Positions 8,851 through 45,240 of a stretch of DNA of 64,000 nucleotides are shown in pieces. This DNA is from Isurus oxyrinchus (lineage: Eukaryota): positions 1,116,001 through 1,180,000 of the forward strand of contig JANJGN010000151.1 of the NCBI GenBank assembly GCA_026770705.1, given 5' to 3'. The first letter of the stretch is position 1; each line of letters starts with the position of its first letter. The notes under the pieces were generated by a model that was given only the letters and a program-made list of their open reading frames with translations, did not search any database and was not told the DNA's origin. The position numbers and the translations under genes were made by a program.

Positions 8851-9639
8851 ATGTTAACATTTTAAAATGCTAGTTGTGATATGTTGAAAACTCTGAGATT
8901 AATATGATTATAGGTCGCTCCTCTGGCTGCTGTTTTAAATTGTCCATTTTAATCGGTTAAATCTTCCAACAAATTGACAATGAGTGTAATCCCAGCCTGT
9001 TCAAATATTCATCATTGATTGTGACAGTAGAACTTACAGAATTGAATTATTAATTTAAATGTATTTTTAATTATTTGAAATAAATAACATCTGTTCTAAT
9101 GGATGTTGAAAATGTTTCTATTAATTTTATACCAACTGTCAATATTCTTAAAATAAACCCTTGTTTTGAGTTGAAACCAATCAATAAGTGTCTATGTTTA
9201 TCTGGTTTTGCTGCCATGAACACTTCATTGAAGTCAGTTTATGTAAATGAACACAGAAATAGAAGTCCCAGATTAGATTCTGGAGACACAAAAACACAGC
9301 AATAGAGTCAAACATGCAAATACATCAACCGATTTCAGTAGCAATTGTTTTTGGGCATTTTTAAAATCAGTTATATGAGAATTATGTCACGATGATATCT
9401 ATGTTTAGAATTAAGTAAGATTCCCACTTATCATGAAATATAATGTCATGGCAAATGTGTTTGGAGGGATGTCCTGTATCCTCTCTCTCTCTCTCTCTGT
9501 CTCTTTCTCCTCTCTGGTACTTTGTCTTGTCTCTCCAACATGGGTCACTGTCTTTACTCCACAACATGAAGTCAATGTCTAGCCAATATATTCTCTCAGA
9601 CCGATTCATACACTTCAAACTAAATTGATCTAATGAAAT

Positions 9640-21298: not shown

Positions 21299-21381
21299 GG
21301 GGCGTGGATCCAGTCGCCGCCTCCACCAGGGAATCAACAGGCGGCGCCTGGGAACCCGCCCCCTTCTGCCGGGTATTTAAA
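21299..21381 (+). promoter_or_regulatory. VH promoter region: GC-box-like ggggcgtgg (21299-21307) and TATA-like tatttaaa (21374-21381); no octamer
   Basis: Motifs lie 80-170 bp upstream of the leader ATG. No ATGCAAAT was seen nearby, consistent with shark VH promoters. Confidence 0.55.
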
Positions 21382-21472
21382 TGCCGCTCACTGGGGCCGG
21401 AATCCAACAGTCCGGGAGTTGGTTTGTTCACTGAGTTCTGGACAGAACCATTTTCCCCAAATGACCAGAAGG

Positions 21473-21518
21473 ATGAGGTCGGCGATTTCTCTCAGTTTGT
21501 TGCTGACTTTCTTATCCC
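21473..21518 (+). CDS. IGHV: VH leader exon (MRSAISLSLLLTFLS; in-frame upstream ATG at 21461)
   Basis: Hydrophobic signal peptide ending at a phase-1 donor c|gtgagt at 21519. Confidence 0.93.
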
Positions 21519-21646
21519 GTGAGTAGTTTTGATTGTCCAAGTCTCTCACTGTTATTGTCTCAGTGTTAGTCTCTCACTGGAATGTTACAGAGTCAGAAAT
21601 CATTTCACCAGGATTAATCCTCGGGGTTTTTGATATATTTTTACAG

Positions 21647-21951
21647 GTGTCCTGTCGGAGGTTGTGTTGACTCAGCCAGAGGCAGAGACCGGGCGTCCCG
21701 GAGGCTCCCTGAGACTGACCTGTAAAACCAGCGGCTTCGATCTTGGCAGCTACTGCATGTACTGGGTCCGACAGGTTCCCGGACAGGGGCTGGAGTGGCT
21801 GCTTTACTACTATAGTTCATTGGACAACATCTATGCCCCAGCAATTAAGAATCGATTCACTGCGTCCAAAGACACTTCAAGGAATATCTTCTCCTTGGAC
21901 ATGACGAGCCTGAAGACTGAAGACACCGCCATCTATTACTGTGCAAAAGAC
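21647..21951 (+). CDS. IGHV: IgM heavy-chain variable segment (VH), open frame
   Basis: Acceptor ttacag|gt. Translates [51 protein letters not shown]...[11 protein letters not shown], with canonical Cys, Trp and YYC. Confidence 0.98.
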
Positions 21952-21990
21952 CACAGCGAGAGGGACCAGGGCTGGACCCGAACAAGAACA
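21952..21990 (+). other. V 23-RSS (cacagcg-23 nt-acaagaaca)
   Basis: Heptamer 21952-21958, spacer 21959-21981, nonamer 21982-21990. Confidence 0.95.
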
Positions 21991-22351
21991 GATCGAGAGA
22001 AACTTCCATCGTAACCTAACGGTCAGTACTTGTTTTAAATGTAATATTAACTGTAATGATCAGAACCCGACAACAAGTTGCTTCTGACAAAAGTAAAACA
22101 GCAAATTTAACAGTAAAACCTAACAAACCAATTGATATAATGGCTGAGCTTTTGGCTGTGCTTACATTTACTGTTAACAGTTTCCACAATTACAGAACTG
22201 GATATAATGTTCATTTTAATATGTCTGATACTTGGAGGGGATCACTGTTCATTGCGTTTTGTAAATTGCTGCATAAGTACTAAACTAGATCAGAAGTAAA
22301 CGTCCATTTGAAGTAAGTATTCAGAGGTAGCACTGAACAGAGAGTGGGTGC

Positions 22352-22434
22352 AGTTTTTGTGCGGGTGTATTTCACTGTGATACTACAGCAGTGGGTCACA
22401 GTGCTGTGCACAGCGACATCCTCACACAAAAACC
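22352..22434 (+). other. D1 diversity segment (atactacagcagtgggt, 22380-22396) with 5' 12-RSS and 3' 22-RSS
   Basis: agtttttgt-12-cactgtg | D | cacagtg-22-acaaaaacc. Confidence 0.96.
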
Positions 22435-22744
22435 TCAGAAGGAGTTTGTTCAAATTGGTGATCACGATCACAACAGGAAAAGTCAAAGAAAATGGGAGCT
22501 AAATAAAATAATGGGTATAAGTAATACTGGTTTGTAAAAATATATATAAGTCTTCCGCTTTGTTTGTGTTTACTGACACGCTAAATCTTCAGAGAGGCTT
22601 TTAAAGAACTTCAATCACATTTACAAATATAATGACCAGCACAAGCTGAAATATCTCATTGGTTTACTCTTAGGCGAGTCAGGATCAGGTTTTTGAGAGC
22701 GCAGTGAGATTAAATCTCTGTATTCACAGTTAACAGTCTGCCGC

Positions 22745-22772
22745 AGTATTTGACATGGTGTGTCTCACTGTG
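22745..22772 (-). other. 12-RSS in front of the J-containing segment
   Basis: Nonamer-like agtatttga (22745-22753), 12-nt spacer, cactgtg (22766-22772). No nonamer at 22/23 spacing. Confidence 0.85.
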
Positions 22773-22821
22773 TATATGCTGGACTACTGGGGGAAAGGGA
22801 CCATGGTGACGGTGACTGCCG
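22773..22821 (+). CDS. IGHJ: JH segment, probably a germline-joined D2-J (YMLDYWGKGTMVTVTA)
   Basis: WGxGT motif and donor g|gtaag at 22822. Preceded directly by a 12-RSS and short D-like tatatgctgga. Confidence 0.92.
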
Positions 22822-22909
22822 GTAAGAACCACACATTTATTTAGTAACTGTTTTATTTGAGTCTTTGCTTTTTTTGTCTATTTTAATAATTCATTCAGCC
22901 AATGAGACC

Positions 22910-24589: not shown

Positions 24590-25460
24590 TCTACCTCGAC
24601 ACACTCAGTGTCTTTACCACACACCCTCACTCGCTCACTCTCACTGTCACACACACTTTCTCTCACATACATGCACACACACTCTCTCACGCAATCTCTC
24701 TGACAGACATACACTCTCTCTTTCTCTCTCTGTCACACACACACACTCACTTTCTCTCTCACACACACAAACTCCCTTTAACACGCACACACTGTCTCTC
24801 ACACATTGTCTCTCTTTTTCACACACACTCTCACACAGACACATTCTCTCATACACATACTCTCTCAACTGCGCACACACATACACACTCTCACCCTCAC
24901 ACATGCATGCACTCTTTCTTTCTCACACATGCACTCTCACACATGCCATTCTCTCTCTCACACACACATGCACACCCACTCTCTCTCACACATACATGCA
25001 CCCTTTCTCCCACACATATACACTCTCTCAATTCTCCCCCTCTCTCACACACAGACACATAACACTGTCTCACACACACACATCTTCATTCTCTCTCTCT
25101 CACGCACACAGAAACACAAACATATTCCCTTTCTCACACAGAAACACTTCTTCTCACACACGGACTCTCTCTCATTCTCTCTTTCTCTCTCTCTGACCCA
25201 CACACTGGCCCTCTCCTTCACACACTCTCTCCCACACACACACACACACACACAATCGCTCTCTCTCTCTTCCATATGCTCTCTCTCTCACACACACATT
25301 TCTTTATCTCACTCTCACACTTATACTCCCTATGACACTCTCCCTCTCTCACATACACTCACAAGCACCCACACACACACTCTCTCCCACCCACACTCTT
25401 AGTCTTTTTGTCTCTCTGTCTCTCTCTCTCTCTTTCTCACGCAGACACACACACCCATTC
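24590..25460. repeat. Degenerate (CA)n/(CT)n microsatellite tract
   Basis: Visible low-complexity sequence; the overlapping His/Thr/Ser/Leu ORFs are artefacts. Confidence 0.95.
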
Positions 25461-25877
25461 TCAAACACAGAAATGGGCTGAAAATGTTAATTTCAGAAAG
25501 AAAACCCGCTAAGCTGCAGGCATGTTTATTGTTCCATTTCTGATGTCTTTTTGTGTAAAATGAAATTACACAAGTGACATCACTATATATGTGGAGAATT
25601 TCCAAGTGTTGAGCCAAACACAAAGAAACAAGAAAAAGGGAAGGATGTGATGGAGACCACGGCCGCCTGGATCCCCAATACTGGTGCACACTTGGTGCAA
25701 GATGCCTGCACGGCCCATCCTGGTTTTGCTGTAACATTCCCCTCCAGCCCCCTCAGTCTGCCTATTCACGCACTGACACGGGTTTCTCAAAGAAAGGCAT
25801 CAGCATTAAAGCAGCTGGCCAGCGATCTACACTGCTGCCTGACTTTACACAGCCAGTGTTACTGAAAGCTGATCAAT

Positions 25878-26054
25878 ATGGAGAATTGGGACAAGTTCGA
25901 CTGAGAGGAAGAGGAGGGGATGGAGGTGGAGGTGGAGGTGGAGACGAATGGAGGAGCCCCCAGCTCGGCTGTGGACAACAGGCAACGGAAAGCTGAGCCG
26001 GCGCAGAAAATCATCTGGAAAAACATCACCATGATGAGCCTGCAGCACCTGGGC
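25878..26054 (+). pseudogene. Stearoyl-CoA desaturase (SCD5-like) N-terminal exon fragment with premature stop
   Basis: MENWDKFD*EEEEGMEVEVEVETNGGAPSSAVDNRQRKAEPAQKIIWKNITMMSLQHLG resembles the SCD pre-TM1 motif (IVWRNVVLMSLLHLG). It is cut off by the CTCA repeat. Confidence 0.7.
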
Positions 26055-26645
26055 ACCCTCACTACCCACAATCACTCACCTTCACTCACCATCACTCACA
26101 CTCACTCAATCACCCTCACTCAGCCACCCTCACTCACTCACCCTCACTCACCCTCACTCACACTCACTCAATCATCCTCACTCACCCACCCTCACTCACT
26201 CACCATCACTCAATCTCACTCCCTCACCTATTCTCACTCAGCCTCACCAATTCACCCAGCTTCACCCACCCTCATCCACTCATCATTAATTACTTTAACC
26301 TTCACTCACTCACCCTCACTCACTCACCCTCACTTACCCTCCCATCCTCACTCACGTACCTTCAGTGACACTCAATAACTCATCCACCCGCACTCACACA
26401 CCCACTCACCCTCACTCACATACCCACCCTCACATACCCACCAACCCTCACTCAGCCACTCGACTACCCTCATTCAATCACCCACGCTCACTCACCCACA
26501 TTCAGACACCCACCCACGCCCACTCAGCACCCACCCTCACTCACGCCTTCACTCACCACCAACCCTCACTCACTCTGCCACCCTACCTTGCTCTGTCACT
26601 CAGCCACCCTCACTTTGTTAAACATGCACACGCTCACTCACTCGA
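26055..26645. repeat. C-rich (CTCA/CCCTCA)n low-complexity repeat
   Basis: Visible in sequence. Confidence 0.9.
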
Positions 26646-26769
26646 TCACTTTCCATAAATCGGTGTATAGGAGGGCGGGAACTGCGGGGAACAGAGACCT
26701 GGAAGCGAGGCCTGAGGCCTAGCAGTGCCAGAAAGTGAAACATGGCTGAAGGGAGCGACGAGCTTCATT

Positions 26770-28200
26770 GGAAAGTGCAGGGAGGCGGGGGGAAAGCTCG
26801 GAGAGCCTGGGGGAAAGGGCAGGGAGGCGGGGGAAATGGCAGAGAGCCGGGGGGGGGGGGGGGTGGGGTGGTGTTGGGGGGGAAGGGTAAGGAGCCGGGG
26901 AAAAGGGCAGGGATCCAGTGGAAAGTGCTTTGGGATGGGGCAAAGGTCAGCAAGCAGGGGGAAAGCTCAGTGAGCCAGTGGAAGGCCAGAGAGGCAGAGG
27001 AGGAGGAAGGGCAGAGAGACGATGGAAAGAGCAGAGAGGTGGGGGGGGGAAAGGGCAGAGAGGCGAGGGAAGGGCATAGAGGTGGGACAGGGAAAGGGCA
27101 GAGAGGCGGAAGGAGGAAAGGGCAGAGAGGTGGGAGGGGGAAAGGGCGGAGAGGCAGGAGGGCAAAGAGGTGGAGGGTTGACAGGGGAGAGAAGCGGGGA
27201 GTGGGACAGGCAGAGAGGTGAGGGGAAACGGCAGTGAGGTGGCAGGAGGAAAGGGCAGGAATGTGGGTGGGGGAAATAGCAGAGAGGCGGCGGGGGAAAG
27301 GGCAGAGAGGAGGGTGGGCAGAGAGGCAGGGGGGAAAGGGCGGATAGCAGGGGAGGAAGGGCAGAGAGGAGGGAGAGCAAAGAGGCAGAGGGGGGAAGGA
27401 CAGAGAGGTGACGGAAAGGGTAGATAGTCGATGGAAAAGGCAGCGAGCTGGGGTAAGGGCAGAGAGGCGAGGGTGTAAGGGCAGAGAGGCGGGGTGTAAG
27501 GGCAGAGAGGTGGGAGAGGGAAAGGGCACAGAGGTGGGAGTGGGAAAGGGCAGAGAGGCGGGTGGGAAAGGGCAGAGGGGTGGATGAGGGAAAGGATAGA
27601 GAGGCAGAGGAAGGAAGGGCAGAGAGGTGATTGAAAGGGCAGCGAGCCAGGGGAACGGGAAAAGAGCAGTGGAAAAGGTCAGAGCTGGGTGAAAGCACAG
27701 AGCGCGGTGAAATGTGTGCAGAGACCTGGGGGAGAAAGGGCAGAGAAGTGATGGGGAAAGGGCAGAGAGGCGGCAGATGTAAAGGGCTGAGAGGTGGGAG
27801 TGGAAATGGGCCGAGAGGCAGGAGGGGGAAAGGGCACAGATGCAGGAGGGGAAAAGGGCAGAGAGATGTGTGGGAAAGGGCAGAGAGGAGGGGGAAAGGG
27901 GACAGAGACGGGAGAGGGAAAGGGGCAGAAAGACGGGGGTGAAGGGCAGAGCGGTGGGTGGGGAAGGGCAGAGCGGCACGGGGGTCTGGGCAGAGAAGCA
28001 GGGGGTGGGACATGCAGAGAGCTGGGGGAAAAGTGAGCGAGCCAGTGGAAAAGGTCAGAGATCCGGGCGAAAGTGAATAGAACCGTGGAGTAAGTGCAGA
28101 GAGCTGGGGTACAAAGGGCAGAGTTGGGGGGGGGAGGCGGGTGGGCAGGGCAGGGAGGTGGGGGTGGGGGAAGGACTGAGAGCCGGGCAAAAGCTGGGAG
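26770..28200 (+). repeat. G/purine-rich tandem repeat (core ggaaagggcagagagg, ~20-25-bp units) in the J-Cmu intron
   Basis: Dozens of units with G runs of 3 or more; strong G skew on the sense strand. Confidence 0.95.
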
Positions 28201-28689: not shown

Positions 28690-30250
28690 AATGGGCTGAG
28701 AAGTTGGACAAATATTTTGGCCTTAACGAGGTGGTTACTAAAATAGCAGAGACATTGTTTTTAATTTTCCAAATTTCCCCAGATTCTGGAAAGGTCTTAT
28801 CAGATTGGAAAATAGGGAATGAGTCTTTTATATTAAATAAAGGAGGGAAAGGGAAAGTAAGAACCTGCAGGCCAGTTAGCTTAACATCTGTCTGAGCGAA
28901 AATGCTGGAATCTATTAAGGCGTTTACCACGGGTCACTTAGAAAATTCAAATGCAATTAGGCATTTGACCCACAAACCCATCTTGGTTTTGTGAAAGGGA
29001 AATCATGTTTGGCTGAAATATTTGAGGCCTATAGAGGAAGTAACAAAGAACATGAATAAAGGAGAACCTGTGGATGTGCTGTACTTGAGCTTCCAGAAGG
29101 CATTTGACAAAGTGGCACATCAAAGGTTACTGCACAAAATAATGGTGTCGGCAGTTACATTTCAGCATGGGTAGAAGTTTGGTTAGCTAACAGGAAACAG
29201 AGAATAGGGATAAATTGATTATTTTATGTTGGCAAGATGTGACAAGTGAAGTGCCAATGGATCAATGCTGCTGCTTCACCTATTTACAATTTATATCAAT
29301 GATTTGAATGAAAGGACTGAATGAATTTGCTAAATTTGCTGATGACACAAAGATAGATAGGAAAGTAAATGGTGAAGAGGGCATAAGGGCAGCAAAGGGA
29401 TATCGATAGGTTAAGTGAGTGGGCAAAAAAATGTCAGTTGGAGTATAATCTGAGAAAATATAAACGTGTCCACTTTGGCAGGAAGAATACAAAAGCAGCA
29501 TATTACTGAAAGGGAGAGAGATTGCAGAACCCTGAGGTACAGAGGAATGTGGATCCCTTGGTGCATGAATCACAAAAAGTTGGAATTCAGGAATAGCAAA
29601 TGATGAAGAAGGCATGTTGGCATTTAGTATAAGGGGAATAGATTATAAATGGAAAGATATCTTACTACAGTTTAATGGGTTGGCGATAAGACCTCGCCTG
29701 AATTACTGTGTACAGATTTGGTCTCATTTAAGAAAGGATATAAAAGCATTAGAAGCTGTTCAGAGAATGTTCATTCAAATGATACTGGGAGGTGTCGTCG
29801 GTTATCTTATGAGGAAAGTATGGATAGGCTGGGCCTGTATCGATTGGAGTTTAGAAGAATGAGAGCTGATTTTATTGAAACACATTACATCTTGAGGGAA
29901 ATTGACAGGGTGGATGTTGAAAGGATGTTTCCCCTTGTGAGAGAGACTAACGATAGGGAACACGGTTTAAAAATAAGAGGTCTCCCATTTCAGACGGAAA
30001 TGAGAGGGTTTTATTTTTCTCTCAAAGGGTCGTGAAACTTTGGAACTCTCTTCCCCAGAGAGCGATGGAGGAGGAGTCATTAAAATTTCAAGGCAGAGGT
30101 AGAGAGATTCTTCATTGACAAGGGAGTCAAAGGTTAGCCGAGAGGAGGCGGGAATGTGGAGTTAATGCCACAATCGGATCAGCTATGACCGGAGTGAATG
30201 GTGGAGGAGGCTAGAGAGGCCAAATGGCTACTACTGATCCGCATGTTCAT
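28690..30250 (+). mobile_element. CR1-clade LINE (decayed RT + 3' end)
   Basis: DWKIGN...RPVSLTSV, DFQKAFDKV-like ttccagaaggcatttgacaaagt, aaatttgctgatgacacaaag (FADDTK), LEFRRMRADFIE. Confidence 0.92.
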
Positions 30251-30809: not shown

Positions 30810-31109
30810 TGACACCGTCTTCGCCCACTCTCTACAGCCTGGTCTCCTCCTGTCAGCAACACAACACCGACGGCTCCGTCACCTACGGCTGTTTGGCGAT
30901 GGACTACTCCCCAGAAATCACCAGCCTGACCTGGAAGAAAGATGGGCAGCAGATCACCACTGGATTTAAGACTTACCCGTCAGTGAGAAACCAGAAGGGA
31001 ACCTACACTCTGAGCAACCAGTTAACCATCACCGAGTCAGAGGGGGAATGCAGCATAATCAAGTGTGAGGTTCAACACAGTGTCTCAGACAAGAGCGTTA
31101 AAATGCCAT
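30810..31109 (+). CDS. IGHM: IgM Cmu1 exon
   Basis: Acceptor ttcccag|tg. [45 protein letters not shown]...[16 protein letters not shown]. Donor t|gtaagt. Confidence 0.97.
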
Positions 31110-31308: not shown

Positions 31309-31617
31309 GTACTGACTTACCTCCAACTGTTCTCCTCACCGTGAGTTCCCGGGAAGAAATCACAACCAACAAATTTGCAACCACCGTCTGTTCAATCATC
31401 GATCTCTGTTCAAAGTCAATCACCGTGAAGTGGCTGAAGAATGGACAACCCATGAATTCAGGAATTGTCACCTCTCCTGTCTTTGAAGTGAACGGGAACT
31501 TCTCGGCGACCAGTTGGCTGAAAGTCTCCGCTGGGGAATGGTTCAGCGACGCAGTGTATACCTGTCAGGTCACTCACCAAGGGCTCACCCAAAGTCGAAA
31601 CGCCACCAAGTGTGAGG
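31309..31617 (+). CDS. IGHM: IgM Cmu2 exon
   Basis: Acceptor ttttgaag|gt. [30 protein letters not shown]...WLKNG...[21 protein letters not shown]. Donor g|gtaag. Confidence 0.97.
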
Positions 31618-32241: not shown

Positions 32242-32553
32242 ATGATCACCACTGCCCCAACGATCCCACAATTACTCTACTGCCACCTCCAATAGAACAG
32301 GTCTTACTAGAGGCGACCGTGTCCTTAACCTGCATCGTTTCTAATGCTCCTTTTGGAGTCCTCGTGTCCTGGACACAAGAGAAGAAGCCTTTGAAATCAG
32401 AGATCGCCGTCCAACCAGGAGAGGATCCCGACAGCGTTGTCAGCAACATAAACATCTCGACACAAGCCTGGCTGAGTGGGGTTGAGTTCAACTGTGTGGT
32501 GAGCCATCAGGATCTGCCGACTCCTTTAAGAAATTCCATCCACAAGGAACAAG
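32242..32553 (+). CDS. IGHM: IgM Cmu3 exon
   Basis: Acceptor tctcacag|at. [33 protein letters not shown]...[22 protein letters not shown]. Donor g|gtgag. Confidence 0.97.
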
Positions 32554-33150: not shown

Positions 33151-33266
33151 TGGATAATGAAACCCCTTAATATTCATCACAAAACACGTTTCTCTCACAT
33201 CTAACCAGCGTTTCATTGTCTACGAAAGCATCCAGTTTATTGACATTTATTGTACATTTTCTGCAG

Positions 33267-33658
33267 TTAAAGAACCGCGGGAACCGTCCGTGTCTGTCCT
33301 CCTGCCCTCGGCAGAACATGTCTCCGCTCAGGGATTCGTCTCCCTCAGTTGCTTAGTGACAGGTTTCTCCCCGCGAGAGATTTTCATCAAGTGGATCGTC
33401 AATGACAAGCCGGTGGCTCCCGGAAACTACAAGAACACCGAGGTAGTGGCGGAGAACGGCAATCGCTCCTTCTTCACGTACAGCCTGTTATCCATTGCAG
33501 CGGAGGAGTGGGCCAGTGGCGCTTCTTACTCCTGTGTGGTGGGACATGAAGCGATCCCCTTGAAGATCATCAACAGAACGGTTGATAAATCCAGCGGTAA
33601 ACCGAGCTTTGTAAATATTTCCCTTGCACTGATGGACATCGTTAATTCATGTCAATGA
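33267..33658 (+). CDS. IGHM: IgM Cmu4 exon plus secretory tailpiece ([20 protein letters not shown]); internal donor for the membrane form after 33596
   Basis: Acceptor ctgcag|tt. [13 protein letters not shown]...[23 protein letters not shown]. Tailpiece has an NIS glycosylation site and penultimate Cys. Internal donor agc g|gtaaa. Confidence 0.97.
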
Positions 33659-36605: not shown

Positions 36606-36733
36606 ATTCCACAGACCGCATATGGATTGAAGACTCTGAGGATGATAACGGCAACATCTGGACAACCACTTCCACATTCATCATCCTCTTCTTCCTGAGC
36701 ATTTTCTACAGCGCTGCCGTCACTCTGGCGAAG
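36606..36733 (+). CDS. IGHM: IgM transmembrane exon TM1
   Basis: Acceptor catag|at. DSTDRIWIEDSEDDNGNIWTTTSTFIILFFLSIFYSAAVTLAK carries the conserved antigen-receptor TM (CART) motif. Donor aag|gtgag. An in-frame alternative acceptor exists at 36615. Confidence 0.96.
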
Positions 36734-36872
36734 GTGAGAAGATTCAATCCACTCACACTTCAAACTGACAGAAGCGGTTTGAAAAAATCTCTCAATGTTT
36801 CATTGATTAAAACTCTAACATAAATGTTCTAGATCATAACAATCTGCTTCATTATTTCATCTTCTTTTACAG

Positions 36873-40799: not shown

Positions 40800-41470
40800 A
40801 AGTATGTGTGACGATATGAAGAAGGAGCAGGAGCAGGCCACTGAGCCATTCAAGCCTGCTTTCCATGCTTCAATAAGTTCATGCCTGATCTGATTGTAAC
40901 CACCCACCGACCCCCCGATAACTTTTCATCCCCTTGTTGATCAATTATCTATCTAGTTCTGCCTTCAAAACATTCGAAGACTCTGATTCCACTGCCTTTT
41001 GAGGAAGATAGTTCCAAAGACTCACGACCCTCTGAGAGAAAAGAAATTCTCTCATCTCTGTCTTAAATGAACTATTCCTTATTTTTAACCAGTAACCTCT
41101 AGTTCTATATTATCCCACAAGAGGAAACATCCTCTCCACATTCACCCTGTCAAGGCCCCTCAGGATCTGAAAGATTTCAGTCAAGTTGCCTCTTAGCCTT
41201 TTAAACTCCAGCGGATACAAGCCTAGCCTGTCCAGCCTTTCCTCATAAGACAACCTGATCATTCTTGGTATTAGTCCAGTAAAACTTCTCTGAACTACTT
41301 CTAACGCATTTACACCTTTCCTTAAATAAGGAGGCCAGTCATCTACACAATACTCCAGATATGGTCTTACCAGAATGCTGCACAACTGCAGCATAGTCTT
41401 CTTACCTCACATTTCCCTCACATTAAATTATAACATTCTATTAGCTTTCCTAATTACTTGATGTACCTAA
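40800..41470 (-). mobile_element. CR1-clade LINE 3' fragment
   Basis: Minus ORF LVRPYLEYCV...LSYEERLDRLGLYPLEFKRLRGNL. Confidence 0.9.
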
Positions 41471-42089: not shown

Positions 42090-42450
42090 AATTCTGTAAC
42101 TTAAGCAAATTGATATAGGGAGTGACAAGGTATTGGAGGTACTGGCAGGCTTAAAAGTGAACATATCTCCAGGTCCGGGTGCTTTGTGTCCCAGACTGCT
42201 GAGGGAGGCAAGGGAGGAGATCACAGGGGCTCTGGCCCAAATTTTTAATTCCTCCCTGGCCACGTGGGAGGTGCCAGAGGACTGGAGAGCAGCTAATGTA
42301 GTTCCGCTATTTAAGAAGGGTTGTAGAGATAAGCCAGGTAACTACAGGCCCGTGAGTCTGACGTCAGTACTAAGGAAACAATTGTAGACAATTCTGAAGG
42401 AGAGTATCTATCCACTTGGAGAGGCAAGGTTTGATCAGGGATAGTCAGCA
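42090..42450 (+). mobile_element. CR1 internal fragment (RT N-terminus)
   Basis: SPGPGALCPRLLREAREEI...PEDWRAANVVPLFKKG...NYRPVSLTSV. Confidence 0.9.
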
Positions 42451-43085
42451 CAGAAAAAGGCCCTTCGGCCCATCGAGTCTGCGCCAGTCAAACAAGTACC
42501 TAACTATTCTAATCCCATTTCCCAGCACTAGACCCAGAGCCTTGTATGCCATGGCATCACAAGTGCACGTCCAAATACCTCTTAAATGTTATCAGGGTTT
42601 CTGCCTCTACCACCCTTTCAGGCAGTGAGTTCCATGTTCCCACCACCCTCTGAGTGAAAAAATTCTTCCTCACATCCCCTGTAAACCTTCTGCCCCTTAA
42701 CTTAAATCTATGCCCCCTGGTTATTGATTCCTCCAACAAGGCGAATACTTCCTTCCTGCCTACCCTATCTATGCCCCTCATAATTTTTTTACACCTCAAT
42801 CTTGCCCCCCTCAATCTTCTCTGCTCCAGGGAAAATAACCCCAGTCTATCCAATCTCTCCACATAACTAAAATTCTCCAGCCCAGGCAACATCCTGGTAA
42901 ATCTTCTTTACACTCTCTCTAGTGCAATCACATCCTTCCTATAATGCAGATTCCAGAACTGCATGCAATACTCTAGCTGTGGCCTAACCAGCGTTTTATA
43001 CAGTTCCAGCATAACCTCCCTGCTCTTATATGCTATGCCTCGGCTAATAAAGGCAAGTTTTCCATATGCCTTCTTAACCACCTGT
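42446..43085 (-). mobile_element. CR1 3' fragment, opposite orientation
   Basis: Minus ORFs KKAYGKLAFISRGI...LEYCMQFW and LFSLEQRRLRG...FFTQRVVGTWNSLP. Confidence 0.92.
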
Positions 43086-43974: not shown

Positions 43975-45240
43975 CCATGATTTTCGGAAAGTGGAATCAT
44001 GTTTAACCAAGTTATTGGAGTTCTTTGAAGAAGTCACATGTGCTGTGGATAAAGGGGAACCGGTGGATGTACTGTACTGAGATTTCCAGAAGGCATTTGA
44101 TAAGGTGCCACATCAAAGGTTATTGTTGAAAATAAAAGCTCATGGTGGAGGGGATAACATATTGACATGGATAGATGATTGCATTAATCGGTCATTTTCT
44201 GGTTGGCAAGATGTAATGAGTGGTGTGCCTCAGGAATCAGAGCCGGGCCTCAATTTTTTACAATTTATATAAATGACTTGAATGAAGGGACCGAATAATG
44301 GTTGTAAAATTTGCTGATGACACAAAGAAAAGTAGGAAAGTGAGGTGTGAAGAGGACATAAGGAGGCTGAAAAGGATATAGACAGGTTACGTGAGTGAGC
44401 AAATATCTGGCAAATGGAGCATAATGTGGACAAATGTGGAATTGTCAAATTTTGGCAGGAGGAATAAAAAGGCAGCTTATTACCTAAAATGGTGAGAGAG
44501 CTCCGAGATGCAGATGGGTCGTGGTGTCTGAGTGCATGAATCACAAAAGGTACAGCAAGTAATTAGGAAAGCTAATAGAATGTTATCGTTCATTGTGAGG
44601 GGAACTGAACATAAACATTGGGAGGCTATGCTTCAGTTTACAGGGCAGTGGTGAGACCATACACAGAGTACTGTGTACAGTACTGTTCCCCTTATTTAAG
44701 AAAGGATGTAAATGCGTTGGAATCAGTTCGGAAAAGGTTTACTAGGCTAATAGCTGGGATGGGCACATTGTCTTCTGAGGGAAGGGTGGACAGGCTAAGC
44801 TTATATCTGCTGGGGTTTAGAAGAGTAAGATGCGACTTTATTGAAACATATAATATCCTGAGGACCCTTGAGAAGCTGAATGCGAAAGGGATGTTTCCTC
44901 TTGTGGGAGAATTTTGAATTAGGTGTGACTGTTTGAAAATAAGGGTCACTCACTTAAGATAGAGATGACAAGTTTGTTTTTCTTTCAGAGGGCCATGAGT
45001 CTTTGTATCATCTTTTCCCGAAAAAGCGATGGAAGTAGAGTCTTTGAACATGTTTTTTAAACAGAGGTAGATAGGTTCTTGATTAGCAAGGGGATGAAAG
45101 TTTATCGGGGGTAGGCAGGAATGTGGAATTGAGGTTACAATCAGATTATCCATGATCTTATTGAATGGCTGAACAGGCTTGAGGGGCTGAGTAACCTACT
45201 CCTGTTCCTAATTTGTATGTTTCTCTGTTCGTATGTTTGC
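43975..45240 (+). mobile_element. CR1-clade LINE (decayed)
   Basis: SCLTKLLEFFEEVT..., gatttccagaaggcatttgataaggtgcc (DFQKAFDKVP), tttgctgatgacacaaag; (gtatgttc)-like tail. Confidence 0.92.

What the first reader, a model, noticed from the sequence alone, without database searches (positions are those of the whole stretch)
21952..22821. IgM cluster with a pre-joined D2-J, giving a TCR-beta-like V23-12D22-12J signal layout
Seen: V has a 23-RSS and D1 has 12/22 RSSs. The next heptamer (22766), with a 12-nt spacer, opens directly into tatatgctgga-ctactgggggaaaggg, the J coding sequence. There is no separate D2, no D2 3' RSS and no 22/23-RSS before J. Established: the usual elasmobranch IgM cluster is V23-12D1(22)-12D2(12)-22/23J, and germline-joined clusters exist in sharks. 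Inference: D2 and J were fused in the germline, with possible GA(C) microhomology and no obvious N bases. V and D1 remain rearrangeable. Under the 12/23 rule this allows V-D1-DJ and also direct V-to-DJ joining that skips D1, producing short, partly fixed CDR3s ending YMLDYW. This would be a semi-invariant heavy chain, and evidence of RAG acting in germ cells.
Basis: partly seen in the sequence, partly recalled or inferred. Interest (0 to 1): 0.85.

Follow-up and report, generated by a model that had tools for sequence, protein, structure and literature searches.

The report
Shark IgM cluster with pre-joined D2-J
This is a complete catshark IgM antibody heavy-chain gene cluster in which the second D segment and the J segment are already fused in the assembled genome; this is a less common form of the "germline-joined" shark antibody genes known since the 1980s, and it lowers junctional diversity only modestly.

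Summary
The window carries one complete IgM cluster: leader, V with a 23-spacer signal, D1 with 12- and 22-spacer signals, then a perfect heptamer with a 12-spacer signal opening into a 49-nt in-frame J-like segment. Cmu1-4 and a TM exon follow. There is no second D and no 22/23-spacer signal before J.

The D2-J fusion reading is supported by public contigs of related clusters. Contigs matching the window up to the heptamer (22772) continue into a separate 13-nt D2 (ATATACTGGATGG) and its 3' heptamer. Contigs matching from 22780 onward are preceded by a J heptamer plus ACTATA. So the left flank is D2-type and the right part is J. A join within the shared TGGA, with no added bases, reproduces 26 of 27 letters.

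Three caveats:
- Canonical J already encodes YMDYW, so the fusion adds one Leu and removes D2 and one junction. "Semi-invariant" is overstated.
- V-to-12-signal joining that skips D1 is equally allowed in ordinary clusters.
- None of the four runs laid held this exact cluster, so germline status rests on the assembly.

A second DJ-type contig was found, and the scan noted the same layout on another piece of this genome (s1-868668, unchecked). This is a variant of a known phenomenon, of moderate interest.

The parts
21461..21518 (+). Leader exon (ATG at 21461, donor GT at 21519)
   Evidence: Sequence. The spliced joint 21518>21647 with GT..AG ends appears in transcript-derived contigs of related clusters (table 5).
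21647..21951 (+). VH exon, intact open frame ending ...YYCAKD
   Evidence: Pfam V-set, E 6.5e-18. 83% identical to a Scyliorhinus torazame VH and 77% to Heterodontus HV01.
21952..21990 (+). V 3' recombination signal: heptamer CACAGCG, 23-nt spacer, nonamer ACAAGAACA
22352..22379 (+). D1 5' signal: nonamer AGTTTTTGT, 12-nt spacer, heptamer CACTGTG
22380..22396 (+). D1 coding segment, 17 nt (ATACTACAGCAGTGGGT), open in all three frames
   Evidence: The core CAGCAGTGGGT also occurs in the indexed text of the Heterodontus DH paper PMC2191167.
22397..22434 (+). D1 3' signal: heptamer CACAGTG, 22-nt spacer, perfect nonamer ACAAAAACC
22435..22744 (+). Intersegment DNA, homologous to the D1-D2 spacer of split clusters
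   Evidence: Related contigs at 80-98% likeness cover it. Those that reach 22772 continue into a separate D2 (tables 7 and 8).
22745..22772 (+). 12-spacer signal inherited from D2: nonamer AGTATTTGA (6/9), 12-nt spacer, heptamer CACTGTG
   Evidence: Loose ends at 22772 in runs X4 and X6.
22773..22783 (+). D2-derived part of the fused coding segment (T + ATATGCTGGA). The last four letters, TGGA, are shared with J.
   Evidence: 9 of 10 letters match D2 letters 1-10 as read from related contigs. The register is not fully settled.
22780..22821 (+). J-derived part (TGGACTACTGGGGGAAAGGG...ACTGCCG), encoding DYWGKGTMVTVTA; donor GT at 22822
   Evidence: Related contigs match from 22780 and are preceded by a J heptamer + ACTATA. 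J-to-Cmu1 splicing is seen as a loose end at 22819.
30810..31109 (+). Cmu1 exon
   Evidence: Pfam C1-set, E 2.6e-14. Splice sites read. Its start matches the spliced loose end.
31309..31617 (+). Cmu2 exon
   Evidence: Pfam C1-set, E 4.3e-16; splice sites.
32242..32553 (+). Cmu3 exon
   Evidence: Pfam C1-set, E 6.9e-08; splice sites.
33260..33658 (+). Cmu4 exon with secretory tail (5' boundary approximate; stop codon at 33656-58)
   Evidence: Pfam C1-set, E 3.6e-20; open frame.
36606..36737 (+). Transmembrane exon 1 (3' boundary approximate)
   Evidence: Motif ...TTSTFIILFFLSIFYSAAVTLAK in frame after an AG acceptor.

Best explanation
This is a structurally intact elasmobranch IgM heavy-chain cluster of the partly germline-joined type, V - D1 - D2J - Cmu.

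In an ancestor with the usual layout V(23) / (12)D1(22) / (12)D2(12) / (22-23)J, a D2-to-J recombination took place in the germ line. It removed:
- the last 3 nt of D2;
- D2's 3' 12-signal;
- the D2-J spacer;
- J's 22/23-signal;
- the first 6-10 nt of J.

The ends were sealed within a 4-nt microhomology (TGGA) with no added bases. What remains is D2's 5' 12-signal in front of a 49-nt fused coding segment. The cluster now has the V23 / 12-D-22 / 12-J geometry of TCR beta and delta loci.

In a B cell it should need two joins instead of three (D1 to DJ, V to D1). The result would be heavy chains with one D, two diversified junctions and a C-terminal CDR3 stem YMLDYW.

Shown: the anatomy, the D2-type left flank and the J-type right part. 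Inferred: RAG as the agent, the germ line as the place, and what the cluster does in B cells.
For: - Signal layout and coding frame.
- No D2, no D2 3' signal and no J 22/23 signal anywhere in the window.
- Left flank is D2-type. Two X4 contigs that match the window up to 22772 continue ATATACTGGATGG+CACAGC. One X6 contig continues ATAACTGGGATGG+C.
- Right part is J-type. X4, X6 and X15 contigs matching from 22780 or 22786 are preceded by an unrelated flank ending ...GAATGTAACACTGTG plus ACTATA, ACGGGA or ACGCG. This is a separate J of 48 nt with its own heptamer.
- Junction. D2(1-10)+J joined within TGGA equals the window at 26 of 27 letters.
- Both deletion end points lie within 3 and 6-10 nt of heptamer borders. 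RAG cleavage followed by end trimming would give this.
- The 13-mer D2 string and the D1 core both occur in the indexed text of the Heterodontus DH-segment paper PMC2191167.
- The rest of the cluster is intact: V-set, four C1-set exons, secretory tail, TM exon.
- A second DJ-type contig in X1 has the same junction length, with T22773A and C22779G.
- The scan noted the same layout on another piece of this genome (s1-868668, unchecked).
- Partly joined shark heavy-chain clusters, and RAG-like joining in germ cells, are established: PMC5192425, PMC2193156.
Against: - No independent DNA read of this exact cluster was obtained. All four runs laid differ from the window at fixed positions (for example 22820, C here and A in every contig). 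None of X4, X6 or X15 covers 22773-79.
- The junction register is not unique. One extra letter (T22773) and G22778 do not fit D2. They do fit an alternative in which the coding segment is canonical J lacking its first AC and carrying a 3-nt CTG insertion.
- Expression and rearrangement of this particular cluster were not shown.
- The donor context here is CCG|GT, where the relatives have CAG|GT.
Confidence: 0.8

Rival explanations
1. Deletion without RAG. A roughly 390-bp microhomology-mediated deletion or replication slip between the similar 5' ends of D2 and J (heptamer + A.TATA..TGGA) fused them in the germ line, with no signal-directed cleavage.
For: D2 (ATATACTGGATGG) and the J 5' end (ACTATATGGAC) are alike. 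Each follows an identical CACTGTG heptamer, and the junction lies in a 4-nt shared TGGA.
Against: Both end points sit within a few nt of heptamer borders, which signal-directed cleavage with trimming predicts. Microhomology joins are also normal for RAG coding joints made without TdT. Earlier work on shark germline-joined genes found hairpin-type footprints (PMC2193156). The sequence alone cannot exclude this rival.
Confidence: 0.1
2. Somatic or assembly artefact. The assembly captured a partial D2-J rearrangement from lymphocyte DNA, or collapsed two clusters, and the germ line carries a split D2 and J.
For: V-D-DJ is a known somatic intermediate in shark lymphocytes and is transcribed (PMC2435157). 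No independent read of this cluster was obtained.
Against: Any one somatic join is rare among cells and would not win an assembly consensus. The flanks are continuous and carry their own private substitutions on both sides of the junction (table 3). A second copy with the same junction length but two substitutions exists in run X1. The same layout was noted on another piece of the genome.
Confidence: 0.06
3. An original single-D cluster whose J always carried a 12-spacer signal, so no fusion ever happened.
For: The coding segment is 49 nt, a normal J length. It differs from the canonical 48-nt J only by lacking AC and having an extra CTG.
Against: The DNA to the left of the heptamer matches the flank that leads into a separate D2 in related clusters. 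It does not match their J flank (...CAGCGAATGTAACACTGTG). The two-D layout is the general elasmobranch IgM pattern (PMC2435157, PMC5192425), so fusion is the direction of change.
Confidence: 0.04

Closest known systems
Partly germline-joined IgM heavy-chain clusters of cartilaginous fishes (VD-J, VD-DJ, VDD-J, VDJ; horned shark, skates; Kokubu et al. 1988, reviewed in PMC5192425 and PMC4279169)
   Same: A cluster-type IgM locus in which two neighbouring segments are fused in the genome, with loss of the signal pair and spacer between them. A DJ join is already part of the published VD-DJ form.
   Different: Here only D2-J is joined, while V and D1 stay split (V-D-DJ). In the paper library searched, V-D-DJ appears only as a somatic intermediate. 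The older primary papers could not be read, so prior description is not excluded.
Germline-joined nurse shark NS4 light-chain VJ genes (Lee et al. 2000, PMC2193156)
   Same: Joined and split copies are close relatives, so the junction can be compared directly with its unjoined parents. The junction looks like a lymphocyte coding joint.
   Different: That is a light-chain VJ join producing a finished V region. This is a heavy-chain partial join that still needs two somatic joins.
Somatic V-D-DJ intermediates in nurse shark B cells and thymocytes (Malecek et al. 2008, PMC2435157)
   Same: The same configuration and the same surviving 12-signal in front of DJ.
   Different: Those arise per cell and vary in sequence. 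This one sits in a genome assembly, with a diverged second copy.
TCR beta / TCR delta signal layout (V-23, 12-D-23, 12-J)
   Same: The same spacer geometry after the fusion.
   Different: This is an IgM cluster by V, J and C sequence. The geometry is a by-product of the fusion and does not indicate relatedness. Whether any 'beyond 12/23' restriction applies is unknown.
IgNAR type III clusters with germline-fused D segments (from my own knowledge, not checked here)
   Same: A partial germline D-region fusion that lowers the number of junctions while the locus keeps rearranging.
   Different: That is a D-D fusion in another isotype.

Membership tests
Elasmobranch IgM heavy-chain cluster (minilocus) | Leader plus V-set exon ending in a 23-spacer signal | tested here: met
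   V-set, E 6.5e-18; 83% identity to a catshark VH.
Elasmobranch IgM heavy-chain cluster (minilocus) | Two D segments: D1 with 12/22 signals and D2 with 12/12 signals | tested here: not met
   D1 only. No free D2 at up to 3 mismatches. This is the departure under study.
Elasmobranch IgM heavy-chain cluster (minilocus) | One J with the WGxG motif and a splice donor, followed by four C1-set Cmu exons, a secretory tail and TM exons within about 15 kb | tested here: met
Germline-joined (partly joined) Ig cluster | Two segments that are split in related clusters are contiguous here, with the signal pair and spacer between them missing | tested here: met
Germline-joined (partly joined) Ig cluster | The flanks on both sides are homologous to those of the split relatives | tested here: met
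   Loose ends at 22772 run into D2 and its heptamer. Loose ends before 22780 and 22786 show a J heptamer and the J 5' letters.
Germline-joined (partly joined) Ig cluster | Junction has coding-joint character (trimming, P/N bases or microhomology) | tested here: inconclusive
   Trimming and a TGGA microhomology fit at 26 of 27 letters. One extra letter and one mismatch leave the register open.
Germline-joined (partly joined) Ig cluster | Present in non-lymphoid or germ-line DNA and inherited | tested here: inconclusive
   The four runs laid did not hold this exact cluster. Indirect support comes from a diverged second DJ-type contig and a second locus noted by the scan (unchecked).
Germline-joined (partly joined) Ig cluster | Expressed, with or without further rearrangement | tested here: inconclusive
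   X1 shows transcripts of the family, and one DJ-type contig that still has its signal. Joints landing at 22778-79 are compatible but not diagnostic.
TCR beta-type locus | TCR V, J and C sequences | tested here: not met
   V, J and C are IgM-type. Only the spacer geometry is shared.

The most novel reading that the evidence does not exclude
The DJ-type clusters (at least two in this genome) are a maintained, expressed subfamily and not accidents. Their TCR-beta-like geometry would let them assemble in two steps, or by direct V-to-DJ joining. They would then supply a fast, low-diversity IgM repertoire, for example early in life, as the fully joined nurse shark IgM1gj does.
Probability: 0.12. 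Interest if true: 0.6.

Novelty: new variant of a known kind. Interest (0 to 1): 0.4.

Why it matters
Germline-joined shark Ig genes are the main evidence that the V(D)J recombinase has reshaped germ-line DNA. For heavy chains, the joining events have been hard to dissect because the junctions of joined and split genes were too diverged (PMC2193156).

Here the junction can be read directly against the D2 and J of close split relatives, and it looks like a clean coding joint without N bases. With the whole assembly in hand, the event could therefore be dated and counted alongside the V-DD-J clusters noted elsewhere in this genome.

The fusion also shows how one event converts an IgH-type signal layout into the TCR beta/delta-type layout. 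The practical effect on the antibody repertoire is probably small.

Tried and rejected
The genomic neighbourhoods of the catshark, bamboo shark and whale shark VH hits could therefore not be fetched, and no full paralogous cluster could be aligned.
- The proteins hold V regions only, or read through into signals. They gave no usable D2 or J.
They hold relatives, not this cluster.
- A metagenome scan for the J body found nothing, as expected.
- Looking up the scan's earlier findings by sequence came back blank.
- Kokubu 1988 (PMC454840) is not held. The body text of Hinds-Frey 1993 is not readable, so the context of the D2 string there is unseen.
- Paper searches for a germline V-D-DJ or 'DJ-joined' shark cluster found none. 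This does not show that none was published.
- Rejected: J with a natural 12-signal (the left flank is D2-type).
- Rejected: 'semi-invariant chain' (the canonical J already encodes YMDYW).
- The V-to-J joints in X1 that land at 22778-79 are not used as evidence that this DJ is expressed. One or two matching N bases would give the same result.

Full report
**What is there**

The window holds a single Ig heavy-chain cluster on the + strand. Its parts are:
- Leader exon, 21461-21518.
- Intact V-set exon, 21647-21951, ending YYCAKD.
- V signal: heptamer CACAGCG, a 23-nt spacer and nonamer ACAAGAACA, 21952-21990.
- D1, 17 nt at 22380-22396. It has a 12-spacer signal on its 5' side and a 22-spacer signal with perfect heptamer and nonamer on its 3' side.
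- A third signal at 22745-22772: a perfect heptamer CACTGTG, a 12-nt spacer and nonamer AGTATTTGA (6 of 9).
- 49 nt of coding directly after that heptamer, 22773-22821, reading YMLDYWGKGTMVTVTA and ending at a GT donor.
- Cmu1-4 (four C1-set exons), a secretory tail and a transmembrane exon, at 30.8-36.7 kb.

The VH is 83% identical to a Scyliorhinus torazame VH and 77% to Heterodontus HV01. An earlier follow-up in this scan treats the genome as a catshark.

**Is it more than chance?**

In the whole 64 kb, both strands, only the two D1 signals and this third signal combine a perfect heptamer with a nonamer of at least 6/9 at a 12 or 22/23 spacing. There are 20 perfect heptamers, and the chance of such a nonamer at a random place is 0.013. 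No nonamer lies 22 or 23 nt from the 22766 heptamer. Neither a canonical D2 with its heptamers nor a canonical J signal is found anywhere in the window at up to 3 mismatches.

**What the fused segment is made of**

The one read-laying run allowed was run at 80% likeness so that related clusters would lay on the stretch.
- Left side. Two contigs of run X4 that match the window up to 22772 continue ATATACTGGATGGCACAGC. One contig of X6 continues ATAACTGGGATGGC. That is a free 13-nt D2 followed by its own 3' heptamer.
- Right side. Contigs of X4 and X6 that match from 22780 onward are preceded by ...CAGCGAATGTAACAC(A/T)GTG ACTATA. That is a different flank, a J heptamer and six J letters. X15 and X6 also show J variants beginning ACGGGA and ACGCG.
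- So the DNA to the left of the heptamer in the window is of the D1-D2 spacer / D2 5' signal type. The DNA from 22780 rightward is J.
- The canonical J of this family is 48 nt, ACTATATGGACTACTGGGG..., encoding YMDYWGKG.

The 13-mer ATATACTGGATGG and the D1 core CAGCAGTGGGT both occur in the indexed text of the Heterodontus DH-segment paper PMC2191167. Its body could not be read, so the context there is unseen.

**The junction**

Joining D2 letters 1-10 to J within the TGGA that both share predicts ATATACTGGACTACTGGGG.... The window matches this at 26 of 27 letters, and nothing needs explaining as N bases. D2 lost its last 3 nt and J its first 6-10. Both end points therefore lie within a few letters of the heptamer borders. 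Signal-directed cleavage followed by trimming and microhomology-guided sealing would give this pattern.

Two details do not fit: an extra T at 22773 directly after the heptamer, and G instead of A at 22778. Both would fit a second reading, in which the coding segment is canonical J without its first AC and with CTG inserted at 22779-81. Under that reading D2 was trimmed away completely. Either way D2's signal now sits in front of J's body. The exact register needs the D2 of the closest split relative.

Spans noted by the scan for complete split clusters (about 1,720-1,760 letters, unchecked) exceed the 1,361 letters here. The difference is roughly one intersegment interval.

**Germline or not**

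This is the weak point. Every contig laid differs from the window at fixed places. At 22820, for example, the window has C and all contigs have A. No contig of X4, X6 or X15 covers 22773-79. The four runs therefore hold relatives, not this cluster, and independent confirmation was not obtained.

Three things argue against a somatic or assembly artefact:
- A single somatic join is too rare to win an assembly consensus.
- Run X1 contains one contig (depth 17.5) that spans the signal and the fused coding segment. It has the same junction length and two substitutions (T22773A, C22779G). That looks like a diverged second DJ-type copy.

Run X1 behaves like a 5'-RACE heavy-chain library. It shows a spliced leader intron, V-to-J joints with CDR3 letters, J spliced to Cmu1 and an adaptor-like end before 21406. 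Its DJ-type contig is therefore probably a transcript. A recurrent microhomology-directed somatic join cannot be fully excluded for that contig.

**How it should work (inferred)**

- The cluster needs two somatic joins instead of three.
- Under the 12/23 rule, D1's 22-signal can pair with the DJ 12-signal, and V's 23-signal with D1's 12-signal.
- V's 23-signal can also pair directly with the DJ 12-signal. An untrimmed direct join is in frame (CAKD-YMLDYW).
- An ordinary cluster allows the same skip, because D2 also carries a 5' 12-signal. That skip is not specific to this layout.
- The canonical J already encodes YMDYW, so the fusion fixes only one additional residue (Leu). It removes D2 and one junction.
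- The product would resemble an ordinary one-D heavy chain with two diversified junctions. It is not a semi-invariant chain.
- The DJ nonamer matches the consensus at only 6 of 9 positions. The J donor context is CCG|GT where the relatives have CAG|GT. Either could lower the cluster's use.

**Comparison with what is known**

Partly and fully germline-joined heavy-chain clusters (VD-J, VD-DJ, VDJ) are textbook features of cartilaginous fishes (PMC5192425; PMC4279169). RAG-like joining in germ cells was argued from nurse shark light-chain genes (PMC2193156). V-D-DJ is documented as a somatic intermediate (PMC2435157).

I found no paper in the searchable library describing a germline V-D-DJ cluster. 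The primary horned shark paper was not available. I therefore rate this as a new variant of a known kind, not a new phenomenon.

Its main value is that the joined junction can be read against close split relatives. Lee et al. said this had been difficult for heavy-chain genes.

**Limits**

- The D2 and J comparison rests on the short loose-end strings printed.
- The run and organism names are coded, so I cannot say which runs are the same species as the window.

Noticed in passing
window 24600-28050: The J-Cmu intron carries about 2 kb of C/CA-rich tandem repeats (24.6-26.6 kb). A G-rich 24-nt repeat follows, about 46 copies at 26.98-28.0 kb, G-rich on the coding strand. GC skew flips from -0.30 to +0.24. 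It looks like a switch region. The scan already noted it (s1-869630).
   Followed up: no
window 21373-21461: TATTTAAAT lies at 21373-81. Adaptor-like loose ends before 21406 in the RACE-like run X1 suggest a transcription start about 30 nt downstream. No perfect Ig octamer occurs within 260 nt upstream of the leader; the nearest are at 9314 and 24099.
   Followed up: partly
window 22820: The window has C where every laid contig of four runs has A. The change is synonymous (Ala), but it alters the J donor context from CAG|GT to CCG|GT.
   Followed up: no
window 21745-21760 (CDR1 of the V exon): There is an extra cysteine in CDR1 (GSYCMYW). The nearest hits listed have N, G or Y at that position.
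   Followed up: no
window 29614-30035, 41110-41394 (-), 42133-42892, 44618-44917: Open frames with ...RLGLYSLEFRRMRGDLIE...-type motifs look like fragments of LINE (CR1/L2-like) ORF2 tails scattered around the cluster. This was judged by eye only.
   Followed up: no
run X1, laid on window 21944-22786: The V-to-J joints carry CDR3 letters containing recognisable D1 (ATACTACAG) and D2 (CTGGAT) pieces. Two have G in front of CTGGAT. This hints that D2 variants with GCTGGAT exist in the family, which would fit the window's ATATGCTGGA (table 5c).
   Followed up: partly
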